The translations under genes and the position numbers were made by a program. The notes beneath the pieces were generated by a model. The model made no database searches, had not been told where the DNA came from, and saw only the letters and a list, made by a program, of their open reading frames with translations. A DNA stretch of 64,000 bases, taken from positions 10,602,001 to 10,666,000 of the forward strand of contig NC_043025.1 of assembly GCF_006345805.1 (NCBI RefSeq). The letters are read 5' to 3'. This document shows positions 57,430 to 64,000 of the stretch, piece after piece (the stretch's first letter is position 1; every line of letters begins with the position of its first letter). Origin of the DNA: Octopus sinensis. Lineage: Eukaryota.

Positions 57430-57900
57430 CACACACACACACACACACAGAAACACACACACATACACACACACAGACAAACACACATATACATATGTGA
57501 CAGTTTCAAAATTGAATACAAGAAGGGCAAAGAAACGAACGGAAAATTCATACATAAGAGATAGACAGGCTGTTTCCTCGTCAGTTATCGTCCAAAAATC
57601 ATTAAAATTTCACTTCTTCAACGATAATATTGTTCGCCTTTTCTGGCGTCAAAAGCGAAAGTGTGCTGGGAATAACGAGCCAACTAGCCCGGTACAATTA
57701 GTGGGTATGAATATAAATATATATCAACAAAACATACAAACATAAATATGGAAAACAACATAAAAGACGTACTGTTCTGAGACAGACATGAGGCCAGACG
57801 CGTATAATTAACACAATGTAAAATGATAGGAATGACTACTAGAGACTTCAGTATTGGATTGAAACATTTGCTATTTTTACTTTGTTATTCTCTTTTACAG

Positions 57901-58005: not shown

Positions 58006-58110
58006 GTGAGTGTGGTTGTAGCAGTGGACTAAGGGTGCGTGGTCGTAAGAGGAGAGGGCGACGGTTGTGGTGATTAATGTTTAGGAAGTGGTGGTGTAGT
58101 ATTACTATAG

Positions 58111-61100
58111 ATGGCGGATACTCCACGGAGAAGATATAATCAAAGAGGATACCAACGGGAGTCGGATGAGGAAACGGATACTAGTGATATAGATGAAACG
58201 GTCGACAACAGAGACGAAGAGGAGAGTAGTGAAGATGAACAGTCTGGATTTTTTGGATGGCTTGGTAGCGGAATACAAAGAGTGGCTAAAGGGGTGGGAG
58301 GGGCAGTTAGAGGAACAGTGGAATTGGATGGTAGCGTGGTGGAAAATGTTGCTCATGGGGTTGGATCAGTTGTTAGTCGTAGAGTTAGATCAGCTGCTAG
58401 AAGAGTGGAATTCGCTGGAAGAGAAGTGGCAAATGTTGCTTATGGAGTTGGATCAGTTGTTAGTGGTGGAGTTGGATTAGCTGCTAGTGGAGTGGAATTG
58501 GTTGGTAGCGTGGTGGAAAATGTTGCTCATGTGGTTGGATCAGTTGATAGTGGTACAGTTGGATTAGCTGCTAGTGGAGTGGGATTAGTCGATAGCGTGG
58601 TGGAAAATGTTGCTCATGTGGTTGGATCAGTTGATAGTGGTAGAGTTGGATTAGCTGCTAGTGGAGTGGGATTAGTCGATAGCGTGGTGGAAAATGTTGC
58701 TCATGGGGTTGGATCAGTTGTTAGTGGTAGAGTTAGATCAGCTGCTAGAGGAATGGAATTCGCTGGTAGAGGAGTGGCAAATGTTGCTTATGGAGTTGGA
58801 TCAGTTGTTAGTGGTGGAGTTGGATTAGCTGCTAGTGGAGTGGAATTGGTTGGTAGCGTGGTGGAAAATGTTGCTCATGGGGTTGAATCAGTTGCTAGTG
58901 GTAGAGTTAGATTAGCTGCTAGTGGAGTGGGATTAGTCGATAGCGTGGTGGAAAATGTCGCTCATGTGGTTGGATCAGTTGATAGTGGTAGAGTTGGATT
59001 AGCTGCTAGTGGAGTGGAATTGGTTGGTAGCGTGGTGGAAAATGTTGCTCATGTGGTTGGATCAGTTGATAGTGATAGAGTTGGATTAGCTGCTAGTGGA
59101 GTGGGATTAGTCGATAGCGTGGTGGAAAATGTTGCTCATGGGGTTGGATCAGTTGTTAGTGGTAGAGTTAGATTAGCTGCTAGTGGAGTGGAATTGGTTG
59201 GTAGAGGAGTGGCAAATGTTGCTTATGGGGTTGGATCAGTTGTTAGTCGTAGAGTTAGATTAGCTGCTAGTGGAGTGGAATTGGTTGGTAGTGGAGTGAC
59301 AAATGTTGCTCATGGAGTTGGATCAGTTGTTAGTGGTGGAGTTGGATTAGCTGCTAGTGGAGTGGAATTGGTTGGTAGTGGTGTGGCAAATGTTGCTTAT
59401 GGAGTTGGATCAGTTGTTAGTGGTGGAGATGGATTAGCTGCTAGTGGAGTGGGATTAGTCGATAGCGTGGTGAAAAATGTTGCTCATGGGGTTGGATCAG
59501 TTGTTAGTGGTAGAGTTGGATTAGCTGCTAGTGGAGTAGGATTAGTCGATAGCGTGATGGAAAATGTTGCGAATGGGGTTGAATCAGTTGTTAGTCGTAG
59601 AGTTAGATTAGCTGCTAGTGGAGTGGAATTCGCTGGTAGAGTGGTGGAAAATGTTGCTAATGGTGTTGGATCAGTTGTTAGTGGTGGAGTTGGATTAGCT
59701 GCTAGTGGAGTGGGATTAGTTGGTAGCGTGGTGGAAGATGTTGCCTATAAAATTGGATCAGTTGTTAGTGGTGGAGTTGGATTAGCTGCTAGTGGAGTGA
59801 CAAATGTTGCGAATGGGGTTGGAAGGGTTGCTAGTGGTGGAGTAGGATTGCTTAGTAGTGGAGTGAAATTAGTTGGTAGCGGGATGGAAAAAGTTGCGAA
59901 AGGTGTTGGGTGGGTTGCTAGCGGAGGAGTTGGATTAGTTGGTATTGGAGTTGGATGGGTTGCTAGTGGAGTTGGAAGGGTTGCTAGTGGAGTTGGAGGG
60001 GTTGCTAGTTGGGGAGTAGGATTGCTTAGTAGTGGAGTGGAATTAGTTGCCAATGGAGTTGGGTGGGTTGCTAGTGCTGCCGTTGGATCGCTTGATAGTG
60101 GAATGAAAAGTATTGCGAATGGCGTTGGGTGGGTTGCTACTGCTGCAGAAGGACTAATTAGAAGTGGAGTAGAAATCGTTGGAAGTGGAATAACAAATGT
60201 CGTGAATGCTCTGAGGTGGGTTACTAGTGGTGGGATGACTTCGTTGATGGGTAATTTGGGTGACCGGATTAGTGGTGGGCTAATCCTTTTCCTCAGTGAC
60301 ATGGCTTCATTATTTGGTAGTTTGGGTGACCGGATTAGTGGTGGGCTAATCCTTTTCCTCAGTGACATGGCTTCATTATTTGGTAATATAGGTGGTTCGA
60401 TTAGTGGTGGGCTAAACATTTTTCTCAGTGGCATGGCATCATTGTTTGGTAGTTTGGGTGACCGGATTAGTGGTGGGCTAAACGTTTTTCTAAGTGGCAT
60501 GGCATCATTGTTTGGTAGTTTGGGTGGTTGGATTAGTGGTGGGCTAACCGTTTTTCTCAGTGGCATGGCATCTTTGTATGGTAGTTTGGGTGGTTGGATT
60601 AGTGGTGGGCTAAACATTTTTCTCAGTGGCATGGCATCATTGTTTGGTAGTTTGGGTGGTTGGATTAGTGGTGGGCTAAACATTTTTCTCAGTGGCATGG
60701 CGTCATTGTTTGGTAGTTTGGGTGGTTGGATTAGTGGTGGACTAAACATTTTCCTCGGTGGCATGGCATCATTGTTTGGTAGTTTGGGTGGTTGGATTAG
60801 TGGTGGGCTAAACATTTTTCTCAGTGGCATGTCTTCATTGTTTGGTAGTTTGGGTGGTTGGATTAGTGGTGGACTAAACATTTTCCTCGGTGGCATGGCA
60901 TCATCATTGTTTGGTAGTTTGGGTGGTTGGATTAGTGGTGGGCTAAACATTTTTCTCAGTGGCATGTCTTCATTGTTTGGTAGTTTGGGTGGTTGGATTA
61001 GTGGTGGACTAAACATTTTCCTCGGTGGCATGGCATCATTGTTTGGTAGTTTGGGAGGTTGGATTAGTGGTGGGCTAAACATTTTCCTCGGTGGCATGGC

Positions 61101-64000
61101 ATCATTGTTTGGTAGTTTGGGTGGTTGGATTAGTGGTGGACTAAACATTTTCCTCGGTGGCATGGCATCATTGTTTGGTAGTTTGGGTGGTTGGATTAGT
61201 GGTGGACTAAACATTTTCCTCGGTGGCATGGCATCATTGTTTGGTAGTTTGGGTGGTTGGATTAGTGGTGGACTAAACATTGTTCTCAGTGGCATGGCAT
61301 CATTGTTTGGTAGTTTGGGTGGTTGGATTAGTGGTGGAATAAACATTTTCCTCGGTGGCATGGCATCATTGTTTGGTAGTTTGGGTGGTTGGATTAGTGG
61401 TGGACTAAACATTTTCCTCGGTGGCATGGCATCATTGTTTGGTAGTTTGGGTGGTTGGATTAGTGGTGGACTAAACATTTTCCTCGTGGCATGGCATCAT
61501 TGTTTGGTAGTTTGGGGGGTTGGATTAGTGGTGGACTAAACATTGTTCTCAGTGGCATGGCATCATTGTTTGGTAGTTTGGGTGGTTGGATTAGTGGTGG
61601 AATAAACATTTTCCTCGGTGGCATGGCATCATTGTTTGGTAGTTTGGGTGGTTGGATTAGTGGTGGACTAAACATTTTCCTCGTGGCATGGCATCATTGT
61701 TTGGTAGTTTGGGTGGTTGGATTAGTGGTGGACTAAACATTTTCCTCGGTGGCATGGCATCATTGTTTGGTAGTTTGGGTGGTTGGATTAGTGGTGGACT
61801 AAACATTTTCCTCGGTGGCATGGCATCATTGTTTGGTAGTTTGGGTGGTTGGATTAGTGGTGGACTAAACATTTTCCTCGGTGGCATGGCATCATTGTTT
61901 GGTAGTTTGGGTGGTTGGATTAGTGGTGGAATAAACATTTTCCTCGGTGGCATGGCATCATTGTTTGGTAGTTTGGGTGGTTGGATTAGTGGTGGAATAA
62001 ACATTTTCCTCGGTGGCATGGCATCATTGTTTGGTAGTTTGGGTGGTTGGATTAGTGGTGGGCTAAACATTTTCCTCGGTGGCATGGCATCATTGTTTGC
62101 TAGTTTGGGTGGTTGGATTAGTGGTGGACTAAACATTTTCCTCGGTGGCATGGCATCATTGTTTGGTAGTTTGGGTGGTTGGATTAGTGGTGGACTAAAC
62201 ATTTTCCTCGGTGGCATGGCATCATTGTTTGGTAGTTTGGGTGGTTGGATTAGTGGTGGAATAAACATTTTCCTCGGTGGCATGGCATCATTGTTTGCTA
62301 GTTCGGGTGGTTGGATTAGTGGTGGAATAAACATTTTCCTCGGTGGCATGGCATCATTGTTTGGTAGTTTGGGTGGTTGGATTAGTGGTGGACTAAACAT
62401 TTTCCTCGGTGGCATGGCATCATTGTTTGGTAGTTTGGGTGGTTGGATTAGTGGTGGACTAAACATTTTCCTCGGTGGCATGGCATCATTGTTTGGTAGT
62501 TTGGGTGGTTGGATTAGTGGTGGACTAAACATTGTTCTCAGTGGCATGGCATCATTGTTTGGTAGTTTGGGTGGTTGGATTAGTGGTGGAATAAACATTT
62601 TCCTCGGTGGCATGGCATCATTGTTTGGTAGTTTGGGTGGTTGGATTAGTGGTGGACTAAACATTTTCCTCGGTGGCATGGCATCATTGTTTGGTAGTTT
62701 GGGTGGTTGGATTAGTGGTGGACTAAACATTTTCCTCGGTGGCATGGCATCATTGTTTGGTAGTTGGGTGGTTGGATTAGTGGTGGACTAAACATTTTCC
62801 TCGGTGGCATGGCATCATTGTTTGGTAGTTTGGGTGGTTGGATTAGTGGTGGACTAAACATTTTCCTCGGTGGCATGGCATCATTGTTGGTAGTTTGGGT
62901 GGTTGGATTAGTGGTGGACTAAACATTTTCCTCGGTGGCATGGCATCATTGTTTGGTAGTTTGGGTGGTTGGATTAGTGGTGGAATAAACATTTTCCTCG
63001 GTGGCATGGCATCATTGTTTGGTAGTTTGGGTGGTTGGATTAGTGGTGGAATAAACATTTTCCTCGGTGGCATGGCATCATTGTTTGGTAGTTTGGGTGG
63101 TTGGATTAGTGGTGGACTAAACATTTTCCTCGGTGGCATGGCATCATTGTTTGGTAGTTTGGGTGGTTGGATTATTGGTGGAATAAACATTTTCCTCGGT
63201 GGCATGGCATCATTGTTTGGTAGTTGGGTGGTGGATTAGTGGTGGGCTAAACATTTTCCTCGGTGGCATGGCATCATTGTTTGCTAGTTTGGGTGGTTGG
63301 ATTAGTGGTGGAATAAACATTTTCCTCGGTGGCATGGCATCATTGTTTGGTAGTTTGGATGGTTGGATTAGTGGTGGAATAAACATTTTCCTCGGTGGCA
63401 TGGCATCATTGTTTGGTAGTTTGGGTGGTTGGATTAGTGGTGGAATAAACATTTTCCTCGGTGGCATGGCATCATGTTTGGTAGTTTGGGTGGTTGGATT
63501 AGTGGTGGAATAAACATTTTCCTCGGTGGCATGGCATCATTGTTTGGTAGTTTGGGTGGTTGGATTAGTGGTGGAATAAACATTTTCCTCGGTGGCATGG
63601 CATCATTGTTTGGTAGTTTGGGTGGTTGGATAGTGGTGGGCTAAATATTTTCCTCGGTGGCATGGCATCATTGTTTGCTAGTTTGGGGGTTGGATTAGTG
63701 GTGGAATAAACATTTTCCTCGGTGGCATGGCATCATTGTTTTGTAGTTTGGGTGGTTGGATTAGTGGTGGACTAAACATTTTCCTCGGTGGCATGGCATC
63801 ATTGTTTGGTAGTTTGGGGTGGTTGGATTAGTGGTGGACTAAACATTTTCCTCGGTGGCATGGCATCATCATTGTTTGGTAGTTTGGGTGGTTGGATTAG
63901 TGGTGGAATAAACATTTTCCTCGGTGGCATGGCATCATTGTTTGGTAGTTTGGGTGGTTGGATTAGTGGTGGACTAAACATTTGTCTCAGTGGCATGGCA
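58111..64000 (+). CDS. Giant Gly/Val/Ser-rich amphipathic repeat protein: acidic N-terminus, about 17 x 29-aa repeats, heptad transition zone, then more than 50 x 22-aa repeats. Uninterrupted ORF 58111-61539; apparent frameshifts beyond
   Basis: 1142-codon ORF without stops through non-identical repeat copies. Variation is synonymous (GGA/GGG, TTC/TTT) or conservative (L/I, G/S, F/Y), with an in-frame TCA insertion at ~60901. Unique N-terminal 60 aa. ATG directly after tag at 58110. Confidence 0.75.

What the first reader, a model, noticed from the sequence alone, without database searches (positions are those of the whole stretch)
58111..64000. Giant amphipathic-helix repeat protein with 29-mer then 22-mer periodicity
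Domain 1 is about 17 copies of GVENVAH-GVGSVVS-GGVGLAAS-GVELVGS (7+7+8+7 = 29 aa, 8 helical turns). A transition zone keeps the GVxxVAS logic without DNA-level tandem identity. Domain 2 is more than 50 copies of GWISGGLNIFLGGMASLFGSLG (22 aa, 2 x 11). The 11/3 periodicity is the lipid-binding signature of apolipoproteins, synucleins and perilipin-4 (established), and the small-residue composition and NVAHG motif recall perilipin-4 repeats. There is no signal peptide. The inferred product, at least ~1960 aa, could coat lipid droplets or membranes or be a cephalopod structural protein. I do not recognise it as suckerin, reflectin or a beak protein.
Basis: partly seen in the sequence, partly recalled or inferred. 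Interest (0 to 1): 0.85.

Follow-up and report, generated by a model that had tools for sequence, protein, structure and literature searches.

The report
Orphan giant amphipathic-repeat ORF, distally broken
A 3.4-kb open reading frame made almost entirely of in-frame tandem repeats (29-residue, then 22-residue units) has the spacing pattern of a very long lipid-binding helix and no relatives in any searched database, but its far end is broken by ten one-base indels and nothing yet shows that it is expressed.

Summary
The repeats are real: 87 bp x17 (29 aa), a degenerate 21/24-bp zone, then 66 bp x57 (22 aa). All are built from one 7/8-residue subunit and read in one + frame starting at an ATG (58111) just after a stop.

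The frame is continuous only to 61539 (1,142 aa). The distal 38 units carry ten one-base indels, so ">=1,960 aa" holds only if those are assembly errors.

Hydrophobicity peaks at 3.63-3.67 residues in all three zones. The 29-mers have a Val/Leu/Ala face with few aromatics, like perilipin-4. The 22-mers have a bulky face and an uncharged Ser/Gly/Asn face, which is ALPS-like rather than apolipoprotein- or synuclein-like.

No orthologue appears among 1.84 billion representative proteins. Pfam Perilipin is not matched; only chlorosome envelope protein CsmC is, and that match depends on residue order.

Coding is supported by the lack of stops and frameshifts over 3.4 kb, while neighbouring non-coding arrays have indels. 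Amino-acid-level selection is absent in the 29-mers (pN/pS ~1) and weak in the 22-mers. AlphaFold2 gives helix or beta-solenoid inconsistently.

Best reading (~0.4): a lineage-restricted gene for a giant lipid-surface-binding helix. Rivals: a beta-rich fibrous protein, or a non-coding or decaying minisatellite.

The parts
58108..58113 (+). In-frame TAG immediately followed by the ATG that opens the ORF
   Evidence: Sequence read; ORF 58111..61539. 'tattactatag|ATG' also looks like a splice acceptor, so an upstream exon cannot be excluded (inference).
58111..58266 (+). Non-repetitive acidic N-terminal segment (aa 1-52; 44% charged, net charge -11, no hydrophobic stretch)
   Evidence: AF2 predicts aa 1-69 as disordered, pLDDT 34-50. 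No Pfam hit. This stretch is also stop-free in one antisense frame, so its openness is only weak evidence for coding.
58267..58308 (+). Lead-in resembling the repeats (GFFGWLGSGIQRVAKGVGGAVRG spans aa 46-68)
   Evidence: translation; composition of aa 53-66.
58309..59787 (+). Domain 1: 17 x 87 bp = 29-aa units (7+7+8+7). Val/Leu/Ala hydrophobic face, Ser/Glu/Asn/His/Gly polar face
   Evidence: TRF 58317-59799, 17.0 copies, 88% matches. Unit table. Helical wheel and shuffles. Only + frame 0 of six frames is stop-free. No indels among 16 units carrying 42 distinct substitution variants.
59788..60228 (+). Transition zone: 20 degenerate 7- or 8-residue subunits (15 sevens, 5 eights = 3.625 residues per turn)
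   Evidence: TRF periods 21/45/66/87/153 bp at 71-77% matches. Translation. Hydrophobicity peak at 99 degrees, 0 of 5,000 shuffles as strong. The subunit count is my parse of the translation.
60229..61485 (+). Domain 2, in-frame part: 19 x 66 bp = 22-aa units (7+8+7), including one unit with an in-frame +3 (extra Ser) at 60889
   Evidence: Synonymous/non-synonymous/stop variant types 12/18/0 against 7.1/21.6/1.3 expected. Consensus units carry no charged residue.
61486..61539 (+). First one-base deletion (in the GG at the unit start) and the resulting stop codon at 61537-61539, which ends the ORF as assembled
61486..64000 (+). Domain 2, distal part: 38 further 66-bp units, 97-100% identical to the consensus. 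Broken by 9 one-base deletions and 1 one-base insertion, plus one +3 insertion. Runs off the window.
   Evidence: All ten indels lie in runs of 2-3 identical bases. Variant types in intact units are 2 synonymous, 9 non-synonymous, 0 stop.

Best explanation
The locus is a lineage-restricted protein-coding gene, or was one until very recently. Its coding exon grew by repeated in-frame amplification of a 21/24-bp (7/8-residue) minisatellite subunit.

The product has three parts: a short acidic, disordered, cytosolic N-terminus; about 640 residues of Val/Gly/Ser/Ala-rich repeats (29-mers plus the transition); and at least 438 residues of uncharged Gly/Leu/Ser/Ile/Phe/Trp-rich 22-mers. If the distal indels are assembly errors, the last domain is about 1,250 residues or more.

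Inferred mechanism: the chain is unfolded when free. On a lipid surface it folds into one very long amphipathic helix whose hydrophobic stripe runs nearly straight (3.63-3.67 residues per turn).
- Domain 1 would adsorb weakly and cooperatively through small hydrophobic residues, as the perilipin-4 helix does on lipid droplets.
- Domain 2 would insert bulky residues into lipid packing defects through a purely hydrophobic, charge-independent interaction, as an ALPS motif does. It has about 1.7 bulky residues per turn and is tens of times longer, so it should bind avidly to lipid droplets or membranes.

Shown here: repeat anatomy, frame, periodicity, composition, and lack of homologues. Inferred: expression, helical folding, lipid binding.
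For: Gene-like features:
- One + frame is stop-free from the ATG at 58111 through the unique 5' part, the 87-bp array, the degenerate zone and 19 units of the 66-bp array (1,142 codons). The other frames have 13-74 stops per zone, except one antisense frame that is open only in the transition zone and 66-bp array.
- All repeat periods are multiples of 3, and the only indel in 58396-61485 is a +3.
- That stretch carries 72 distinct substitution variants and no frameshift. Non-coding arrays in the same window carry 7 distinct one-base indels per 54 substitution variants, about 1.5 per kb. This predicts 5-9 frameshifts in the stretch, giving P(0) of about 1e-2 to 1e-4.
- Proximal 22-mer units have an excess of synonymous variants: 15 of 35 against 8.6 expected, p=0.013.

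Helix and lipid-binding features:
- The dominant hydrophobicity period is 98-99 degrees in all three zones.
- On a helical wheel, all 13 Val/Leu/Ala of the 29-mer fall in a roughly 190-degree arc. All 10 bulky residues of the 22-mer fall in one arc, opposite a Ser/Gly/Asn/Ala face.
- There are zero prolines in about 1,090 repeat residues.
- Domain 1 composition is close to the PLIN4 helix values. Domain 2 meets the chemical definition of an ALPS motif.
- Domain 1 scores 46.5 bits (cut-off 26.3) on Pfam Chlorosome_CsmC, a protein family of a lipid-monolayer envelope. The match vanishes in 7 shuffled, permuted or reversed controls.
- Among the best hits I inspected for domain 2 in 1.84 billion proteins are W/F-periodic repeats with the sequence features of phage tape-measure proteins, e.g. 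GDWIxSGLKPL 11-mers. The library carries no annotation, so that identification is my reading of the sequences. That tape-measure proteins are helical is my own knowledge.
- AF2 run 1 modelled the 29-mers and transition as long helices.
Against: - There is no transcript, peptide or orthologue evidence of any kind.
- pN/pS among the 29-mer units is 1.08. Their variant types are 12/30/0 against a neutral expectation of 11.3/29.4/1.3.
- Non-synonymous variants do not preferentially preserve the hydrophobic moment, P=0.2-0.7. The amphipathic pattern may simply be inherited from the founder unit.
- The synonymous excess in the 22-mers is equally seen in the open antisense frame.
- Long ORFs in 3n-period arrays arise easily in this genome. 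A 48-bp array is open in three frames for 492-588 aa.
- The distal array is frameshifted ten times.
- Composition is unfavourable for a helix in solution: 19-29% Gly with GG doublets, and 28% Val.
- AF2 run 2 modelled the 29-mers as a beta-solenoid at pLDDT 80-89, and run 1 modelled the 22-mers as a beta-solenoid at pLDDT 55-80.
- On the Kyte-Doolittle scale the 22-mer also has a strong period-2 harmonic: 0.41 against 0.34 for the helical harmonic.
Confidence: 0.4

Rival explanations
1. It is a real protein, but the repeats fold or assemble as beta structure: a beta-solenoid with one 29- or 22-residue unit per coil, or cross-beta or silk-like fibres. The product would then be a self-assembling structural or storage material rather than a lipid coat.
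For: - AF2 models the 22-mers as a 22-residue-per-coil solenoid at pLDDT 55-80.
- In a second run it models the 29-mers as a 29-residue-per-coil solenoid at pLDDT 80-89, pTM 0.68.
- Composition has high beta and turn propensity: Val 28% and Gly 19% in domain 1; Gly 27-29% in domain 2, with three GG doublets per 22-mer that could form corners, and one conserved Asn per unit.
- The period-2 harmonic is the largest on the Kyte-Doolittle scale for the 22-mer.
Against: [quoted passage not shown]
- AF2 contradicted itself on the 29-mers, giving helix and solenoid.
- The Foldseek search of the PDB gave nothing better than E=0.56.
- The helical harmonic is the strongest for the 29-mer on both scales, and for the 22-mer on the Fauchere-Pliska scale.
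- There is no signal peptide for a secreted material, if 58111 is the start.
Confidence: 0.2
2. It is not a functional gene. Either it is a G/T-rich minisatellite complex whose unit lengths happen to be multiples of 3 and whose founder unit happens to lack stops in one frame, or it is a dead gene now decaying from its 3' end.
For: - The window is full of tandem arrays, and a 48-bp array is open in three frames for about 500-590 aa.
- pN/pS is about 1 in the 87-bp array.
- There is no filtering of variants for amphipathicity.
- The distal array has ten frameshifts and neutral-looking variants, 2 synonymous to 9 non-synonymous.
- No homologue was found anywhere.
- The unique 5' stretch is also open in an antisense frame.
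Against: - No frameshift and no stop occurs across 3.4 kb that includes zones only 71-88% self-identical. Control arrays in the same window carry one-base indels. The expected number of stop-creating variants in the two arrays alone is about 2.6.
- The ORF begins with an ATG on the first codon after a stop, outside the repeats.
- Two different units (29-mer and 22-mer) each show the helical harmonic at the 0.3-2% level by shuffling.
- The 22-mers show a synonymous excess, p=0.013.
Confidence: 0.25
3. A variant on extent, compatible with the best explanation: the ten distal indels are real. The gene then truly ends at 61539 (1,142 aa) and the remaining 2.5 kb or more of 66-bp units is untranslated array.
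For: - There are no frameshifts in 58111-61485 against ten in 61486-64000, as expected if only the part upstream of the first stop is under selection.
- Distal variants look neutral, 2 synonymous to 9 non-synonymous.
- None of the indels is in the longest homopolymers (TTTT, AAA), which length-dependent sequencing error would favour.
Against: - The distal ratio of indel to substitution variants is about 0.8, roughly six times that of non-coding arrays in the same window (0.13). Nine of the ten indels are deletions, and all ten lie in short homopolymers within units otherwise identical to the consensus. This pattern fits unpolished long-read consensus error in a near-perfect array.
- A 97%-identical control array shows the same kind of singleton one-base deletions.
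Confidence: 0.4

Closest known systems
Perilipin-4 giant amphipathic helix (29 x 33-mer, about 968 aa; PMC5889406)
   Same: - A short N-terminal segment followed by hundreds of residues of near-perfect tandem repeats without indels.
- Monotonous small-residue composition rich in Val and Gly.
- Almost no aromatics in domain 1 (0.016 against 0.002) and a similar charged fraction (0.14 against 0.15).
- Similar hydrophobic moment (0.28-0.30 against 0.257).
- A hydrophobic stripe that runs nearly straight.
   Different: - The unit is 29 aa (8 turns of 3.625), not 33 aa (3 x 11).
- Ser replaces Thr, and Arg/Glu/His replace the Lys-rich asymmetric polar face.
- It is more hydrophobic (0.48 against 0.35).
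- There is no Pfam Perilipin match, and none of the hits inspected was a perilipin.
- The C-terminal 4-helix bundle cannot be checked because the 3' end lies outside the window.
ALPS motifs (ArfGAP1, GMAP-210; PMC6164224)
   Same: Domain 2 has bulky hydrophobic residues (Leu, Ile, Phe, Met, Trp) on one face. The other face is made only of Ser, Gly, Asn and Ala, with no charge. This matches the stated ALPS definition: a polar face of small polar residues, no charged residues, and binding driven by the hydrophobic effect.
   Different: - Known ALPS motifs are tens of residues long; the GMAP-210 motif is aa 1-38. This domain is 438 to about 1,250 residues.
- It has about 1.7 bulky residues per turn against one per turn in GMAP-210. 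In GMAP-210, condensing the bulky residues abolished curvature selectivity and allowed binding to lipid droplets.
- There is no Thr.
- GG doublets are present.
Chlorosome envelope protein CsmC (Pfam PF11098)
   Same: Domain 1 matches the profile at 46.5 bits (cut-off 26.3), covering positions 21-119 of 139 in seven stretches. The match depends on residue order. The chlorosome envelope is described as a lipid monolayer, so it is a functional analogue of a lipid-droplet surface.
   Different: The Pfam profile is 139 positions long. That CsmC proteins are correspondingly small and belong to green sulfur bacteria is my own knowledge. Here the match is a repeat array inside a eukaryote-type, repeat-rich genome. 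Common descent is very unlikely, and convergence of Gly/Val/Ala/Ser amphipathic repeats is the simpler reading (inference).
Exchangeable apolipoproteins (22-mer = 2 x 11) and alpha-synuclein (11-mer)
   Same: The 22-residue period and the 11/3 helical spacing of domain 2.
   Different: - No Pro punctuation, with zero Pro in the repeats.
- No charged class-A polar face, with zero charged residues in the consensus 22-mer.
- No signal peptide and no KTKEGV-type motif.
The features of these families are stated from my own knowledge.
Repeat regions resembling phage tail tape-measure proteins (inspected best hits in the 1.84-billion-protein search)
   Same: Gly/Ser/Ala-rich repeats with Trp/Phe at fixed 11-residue-type spacing, e.g. 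'GDWIxSGLKPL' and 'FQGWISSDGPGKLIGG'. E-values reach 2.7e-18 over 300-500 residues of domain 2.
   Different: Identity is 14-30%. The hits are heterogeneous and viral or bacterial, with charged residues and unrelated flanking domains. This is periodic low-complexity resemblance, not orthology. The library carries no names, so 'tape-measure' is my reading of the sequences.

Membership tests
Perilipin family (PLIN1-5) | Sequence match to the Perilipin profile (PAT / 11-mer region, Pfam PF03036) | tested here: not met
   There was no Perilipin hit at E<=1 for the whole ORF or at E<=10 for four sub-regions. None of the 19 hits I inspected among the 133 with E<=1e-3 in 1.84 billion proteins was a perilipin.
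Perilipin family (PLIN1-5) | 11-mer (PLIN4: 33-mer) repeat amphipathic region | tested here: inconclusive
   Domain 2 is 22 = 2 x 11, giving 3.667 residues per turn. Domain 1 is 29 aa, giving 3.625, which is not a multiple of 11.
Perilipin family (PLIN1-5) | C-terminal 4-helix bundle | not testable with these tools
   The array runs off the window at 64000, so the 3' end of the gene is not available.
ALPS motif | Amphipathic helical periodicity with bulky hydrophobic residues on one face | tested here: met
   The 22-mer helical harmonic holds 0.47 of the power (Fauchere-Pliska scale) and was matched by 71 of 20,000 shuffles. All 10 bulky residues fall in one arc.
ALPS motif | Polar face of Ser/Thr/Gly with no charged residues | tested here: met
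   The polar face is 5 Gly, 4 Ser, 1 Asn and 1 Ala. The charged fraction is 0.000 over aa 793-1125. Definition taken from PMC6164224.
ALPS motif | Short motif (tens of residues) with sparse hydrophobics, about one per turn, giving curvature selectivity | tested here: not met
   The domain is at least 438 residues long with about 1.7 bulky residues per turn. Curvature-dependent binding itself is not testable here.
Exchangeable apolipoproteins | Secreted; 22-mer / 11-mer helices punctuated by Pro, with a charged class-A polar face | tested here: not met
   The 22-mer period is present. However, there are zero Pro and zero charged residues in the consensus units, and the N-terminus is acidic without a hydrophobic signal region.
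Chlorosome_CsmC (PF11098) | Profile score above Pfam's gathering cut-off | tested here: met
   Domain 1 scores 46.5 bits against a cut-off of 26.3, E=4.8e-12. None of 7 shuffled, column-permuted or reversed controls matched at E<=10.
Chlorosome_CsmC (PF11098) | Small protein of a bacterial chlorosome envelope | tested here: not met
   The host sequence is a 1,142-aa repeat ORF. It lies in a microsatellite-, LINE- and SINE-rich scaffold carrying an N gap. I therefore file the match as convergence, not membership.
Beta-solenoid repeat proteins | One repeat unit per coil with a stacked hydrophobic core, supported by a reliable model or structure | tested here: inconclusive
   AF2 gives solenoids, but it is inconsistent for the 29-mers and has a known bias on perfect repeats. 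There is no significant PDB structural match.

The most novel reading that the evidence does not exclude
An animal lineage has evolved, de novo from a 21/24-bp minisatellite and independently of perilipins, a cytosolic two-module giant amphipathic helix that coats lipid droplets or membranes. The modules are a roughly 640-residue perilipin-4-like weak binder fused to a charge-free 'poly-ALPS' of 440 to over 1,250 residues. It would be the longest ALPS-type helix known and a natural test of how helix length, charge and hydrophobic density set organelle selectivity.
Probability: 0.3. Interest if true: 0.75.

Novelty: new variant of a known kind. Interest (0 to 1): 0.5.

Why it matters
If expressed, this would be a second, independently evolved example of a giant repetitive amphipathic helix; perilipin-4 is the main precedent. 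Its chemistry has not been described at this scale: hundreds to more than a thousand residues with bulky hydrophobics and no charge.

The PLIN4 and ALPS work has had to build artificial mutants to ask how helix length, hydrophobic density and polar-face charge decide which lipid surface a helix chooses. This protein would offer a natural case.

It would also be a clear example of gene birth and growth by in-frame minisatellite amplification.

If it is not expressed, it is a cautionary example. Tandem arrays with 3n periods in repeat-rich genomes can mimic designed-looking proteins, and can even score above a Pfam gathering threshold (CsmC).

Tried and rejected
- **Homologues.** The word-indexed search of 5.8 billion proteins gave one weak compositional hit. 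The exhaustive HMMER search of 1.84 billion representatives gave 133 hits, best 82 bits. The 19 I inspected were tape-measure-like proteins, cyanobacterial 7-mer repeat proteins, LRRs and other repeat sequences, not orthologues.
- **Exact-product look-up.** The ORF's product is not on record.
- **Related loci.** Back-translated pattern scans of the metagenome and GTDB genome collections found nothing.
- **Literature.** No paper in the library contains four characteristic peptide strings.
- **PDB by sequence.** Only de novo single-chain coiled-coil barrels matched (8qah, E=1e-6). This is a heptad-like resemblance with no functional meaning.
- **PDB by fold.** Nothing significant.
- **Rfam.** No family matched anywhere in the window.
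- **Other copies.** The repeat motif occurs nowhere else in the window.
- **Upstream exons.** No convincing open segment with protein-like composition lies in 44-58 kb on the + strand.
- **Antisense gene.** The - strand ORF 59745..61478 (577 aa, 'PPRKMFSPPLIQPPKLPNNDAM' repeats) was considered. It is closed throughout the 87-bp array and does not reach unique sequence.
- **CsmC as a compositional artefact.** Rejected, because 7 controls gave no hit. I still do not accept it as homology.
- **Selection for amphipathicity.** None was detectable among the non-synonymous variants.
- **Organism.** It could not be identified. The only conserved ORF (25547-26260) has 43-62% matches in unnamed Logan and ENA samples.

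Full report
**1. What is in the sequence**

Tandem Repeats Finder reports three zones:
- 87 bp x 17.0 copies at 58317-59799, 88% matches.
- A degenerate zone at about 59618-60176 with periods of 21, 45, 66, 87 and 153 bp, 71-77% matches.
- 66 bp x 57.2 copies at 60229-64000, 95% matches, running off the window.

An ATG at 58111 directly follows an in-frame TAG. It opens a frame that reads through all three zones. The layout is:
- An acidic, non-repetitive N-terminus (aa 1-52).
- A short repeat-like lead-in.
- Seventeen 29-mers, consensus ASGVELVGSVVENVAHGVGSVVSG[G/R]VGLA, which is 7+7+8+7 residues.
- Twenty degenerate 7- or 8-residue subunits.
- 22-mers, consensus GGMASLFGSLGGWISGGLNIFL, which is 7+8+7 residues.

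The 66-bp unit still shares DNA words with the 87-bp unit (GGTTGGATTAGTGG...). The whole locus therefore descends from one 21/24-bp subunit. The motif occurs nowhere else in the window.

**2.

The frame is not continuous to 64000. The ORF is 58111..61539, 1,142 aa.

Unit-by-unit alignment shows that the first 19 units of the 66-bp array are exactly 66 bp, apart from one +3 unit. From 61486 onward there are nine one-base deletions, one one-base insertion and one +3 insertion in 38 units. After each frameshift the other two frames hit one or two stops per unit. The '>=1,960 aa' product requires reading through ten frameshifts.

**3. Are the distal indels real?**

For assembly error:
- All ten lie in runs of 2-3 identical bases. 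About 61% of the consensus is in such runs, so p is about 0.007.
- Nine of the ten are deletions.
- The units that carry them are otherwise 97-100% identical to the consensus.
- The ratio of distinct indel variants to distinct substitution variants is about 0.8. In non-coding arrays of the same window it is 0.13 (7 per 54).
- A 97%-identical control array also has singleton one-base deletions.

For real indels:
- There are none in the 3.4 kb upstream of the first one.
- Variants in intact distal units look neutral, 2 synonymous to 9 non-synonymous.
- None of the indels sits in the longest runs (TTTT, AAA).

I put assembly error at about 0.6 and real truncation at about 0.4. Raw reads would settle it.

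**4. Is it coding?**

For coding:
- Only + frame 0 is stop-free across 58111-61485. The other frames have 13-74 stops per zone. One antisense frame is open, but only in the transition zone and the 66-bp array.
- The arrays at 58396-61485 carry 72 distinct substitution variants, no frameshifting indel and one +3.
- Control arrays predict 5-9 frameshifts over the same stretch, so P(0) is about 1e-2 to 1e-4.
- About 2.6 stop-creating variants are expected in the two arrays, and none is seen.
- Proximal 22-mer units show an excess of synonymous variant types: 15 of 35 against 8.6 expected, p=0.013.

Against coding:
- Among the 29-mers, pN/pS is 1.08 and variant types are 12/30/0 against a neutral 11.3/29.4/1.3.
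- The synonymous excess in the 22-mers is mirrored in the open antisense frame.
- Non-synonymous variants are no kinder to the hydrophobic moment than random ones, P=0.2-0.7.
- The unique 5' stretch is also open in one antisense frame.
- A 48-bp array elsewhere in the window is open in three frames for 492-588 aa.

Net judgement: frame maintenance is significant, but amino-acid-level constraint is weak or absent. I estimate about 0.65-0.75 that this is, or recently was, a coding exon.

**5. Periodicity and chemistry**

The hydrophobicity spectrum peaks at 98-99 degrees in all three repeat zones.

| Zone | Helical harmonic | Share of power | Shuffles as strong |
|---|---|---|---|
| 29-mer consensus | 8 per 29 = 3.625 residues | 0.28-0.38 | 63-340 of 20,000 |
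| 22-mer consensus | 6 per 22 = 3.667 residues | 0.34-0.47 | 71-387 of 20,000 |
| Transition zone | peak at 99 degrees | not computed | 0 of 5,000 |

Repeats related by descent inflate the transition-zone test.

Helical wheels:
- In the 29-mer, 13 Val/Leu/Ala residues fall in a roughly 190-degree arc. Ser, Glu, Asn, His and Gly lie opposite.
- In the 22-mer, all ten bulky residues fall in one arc. The opposite face is purely Ser, Gly, Asn and Ala.

Composition:

| Region | Hydrophobic | Aromatic | Charged |
|---|---|---|---|
| Domain 1 | 0.48 | 0.016 | 0.136 |
| Consensus 22-mers (aa 793-1125) | 0.50 | 0.135 | 0.000 |
| PLIN4 helix, 968 aa (PMC5889406) | 0.35 | 0.002 | 0.15 |

There are no prolines in about 1,090 repeat residues. 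Hydrophobic moments are 0.28-0.30 for domain 1 and 0.44-0.45 for domain 2. The PLIN4 helix has 0.257.

Domain 1 is therefore PLIN4-like in chemistry. Domain 2 fits the ALPS definition: a small uncharged polar face, bulky hydrophobics, and binding driven by the hydrophobic effect (PMC6164224). It does not fit the charged apolipoprotein or synuclein type. It has about 1.7 bulky residues per turn. In GMAP-210, moving from one to two per turn abolished curvature selectivity and allowed lipid-droplet binding.

**6. Relatives**

- The word-indexed search of 5.8 billion proteins gave one weak hit.
- The exact product is not on record.
- The exhaustive HMMER search of 1.84 billion representatives gave 133 hits at E<=1e-3, best 2.7e-18 at 82 bits and 14-49% identity. 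The ones I inspected were tape-measure-like proteins, cyanobacterial 'SGVGLTA' 7-mer proteins, LRR proteins, trimeric-adhesin-like repeats and obvious repeat translations. These are periodic analogues, not orthologues, and none was a perilipin.
- Scans of the metagenome and GTDB contig collections found nothing.
- Four signature peptide strings occur in no paper in the library.
- The PDB sequence search matched only designed coiled-coil barrels.
- Pfam gives no Perilipin hit. It does give Chlorosome_CsmC at 46.5 bits, above the 26.3 cut-off, on domain 1. Seven shuffled, column-permuted or reversed controls gave no CsmC hit, so the match depends on residue order.

The chlorosome envelope is described as a lipid monolayer (PMC2882566). 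I read the CsmC match as convergence of small-residue amphipathic repeats that sit on lipid monolayers. It is a functional hint, not homology.

**7. Structure prediction**

- AF2, single sequence, on aa 415-926: the 29-mers and the transition came out as long helices (pLDDT about 50-60). The 22-mers came out as a 22-residue-per-coil beta-solenoid (pLDDT 55-80).
- AF2 on aa 1-330: the N-terminus was disordered. The same 29-mers came out as a 29-residue-per-coil beta-solenoid (pLDDT 80-89).

The two runs contradict each other. AF2 is also known to produce confident but unrealistic beta-solenoids on perfect repeats (PMC11795689). A Foldseek search of the PDB found nothing significant. Structure prediction is therefore not decisive, and a beta-rich fold stays a live rival given the Val and Gly content and the GG doublets.

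**8. Mechanism I commit to (confidence about 0.4)**

A lineage-restricted cytosolic protein that is unfolded when free and folds on lipid surfaces into a very long, nearly straight amphipathic helix.
- At 1.5 angstrom per residue, domain 1 plus the transition would span about 96 nm.
- The in-frame part of domain 2 would span about 66 nm, and all 57 units about 188 nm. These lengths are inferences.
- Domain 1 would act as a weak, length-dependent PLIN4-like binder.
- Domain 2 would act as a charge-independent, packing-defect-seeking poly-ALPS anchor.

Rivals:
- A beta-solenoid or cross-beta self-assembling protein (0.2).
- A non-coding or decaying minisatellite (0.25).

Whether the ORF ends at 61539 or continues is a separate open question.

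**9. Context**

The window is a repeat-rich, scaffolded eukaryotic sequence. It has an N gap at 40443-40542 and many microsatellites, satellites and LINE-like fragments. It has no Rfam family at gathering threshold.

**10. Verdict**

If real, it is a new variant of a known kind of protein. Interest is moderate (0.5) until expression is shown.

Noticed in passing
window 13636-15068: A 48-bp x 30 tandem array (89% matches) is open in three reading frames for 588, 573 and 492 aa. One frame reads as a Thr/Ala-rich 'TTTARSAIGATAAIA' repeat. It shows that long ORFs arise easily in 3n-period arrays here. Whether it is itself coding is unknown.
   Followed up: partly
window 8686-10808 and 28360-29252: The same 108-bp satellite family occurs twice in opposite orientation about 18 kb apart (19.7 and 8.3 copies, 95-96% matches).
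   Followed up: partly
window 17181-18845: A 139-bp array (12 copies, 97% matches) has a 416-bp higher-order period. It carries three singleton one-base deletions and was used as an indel control.
   Followed up: partly
window 25547-26260 (+): A 237-aa ORF has 62%-identical predicted proteins on roughly 1-1.5 kb Logan contigs (ERR12921340, ERR12945500 and others) and a 43% match on an ENA contig (ERZ26168041). None of these hits has a precomputed Pfam domain. It is probably a real conserved exon or gene about 32 kb upstream of the repeat ORF.
   Followed up: partly
window 31914-33075 and 37956-38510: 185-bp units (93-99% matches) occur in tandem and again in inverted orientation about 5 kb away. 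They look like an amplified SINE-type element. No Rfam family reached threshold.
   Followed up: no
window 3072-3689 (+), 44423-45079 (-), 49594-49950 (+): ORF fragments with LINE-type reverse-transcriptase or endonuclease-like sequence. They appear to be retrotransposon debris (judged by eye only).
   Followed up: no
window 40443-40542: A run of exactly 100 N marks a scaffold gap. The window therefore comes from a scaffolded assembly, which bears on the question of consensus errors in the distal array.
   Followed up: no
window 1-1785 and 41574-43560: Extreme strand-asymmetric low-complexity tracts: a TTTC-rich tract with 134/174-bp higher-order units, and an AAG-rich tract. GC skew reaches -0.76 and +0.79.
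   Followed up: no
window 58008-58110: The stretch just upstream of the ATG begins GTGAGT and ends TATAG (103 bp), so it looks like a small intron. A second acceptor-like 'ttttacag' sits at about 57893-57900. The true 5' end of the gene may therefore differ from 58111.
   Followed up: no
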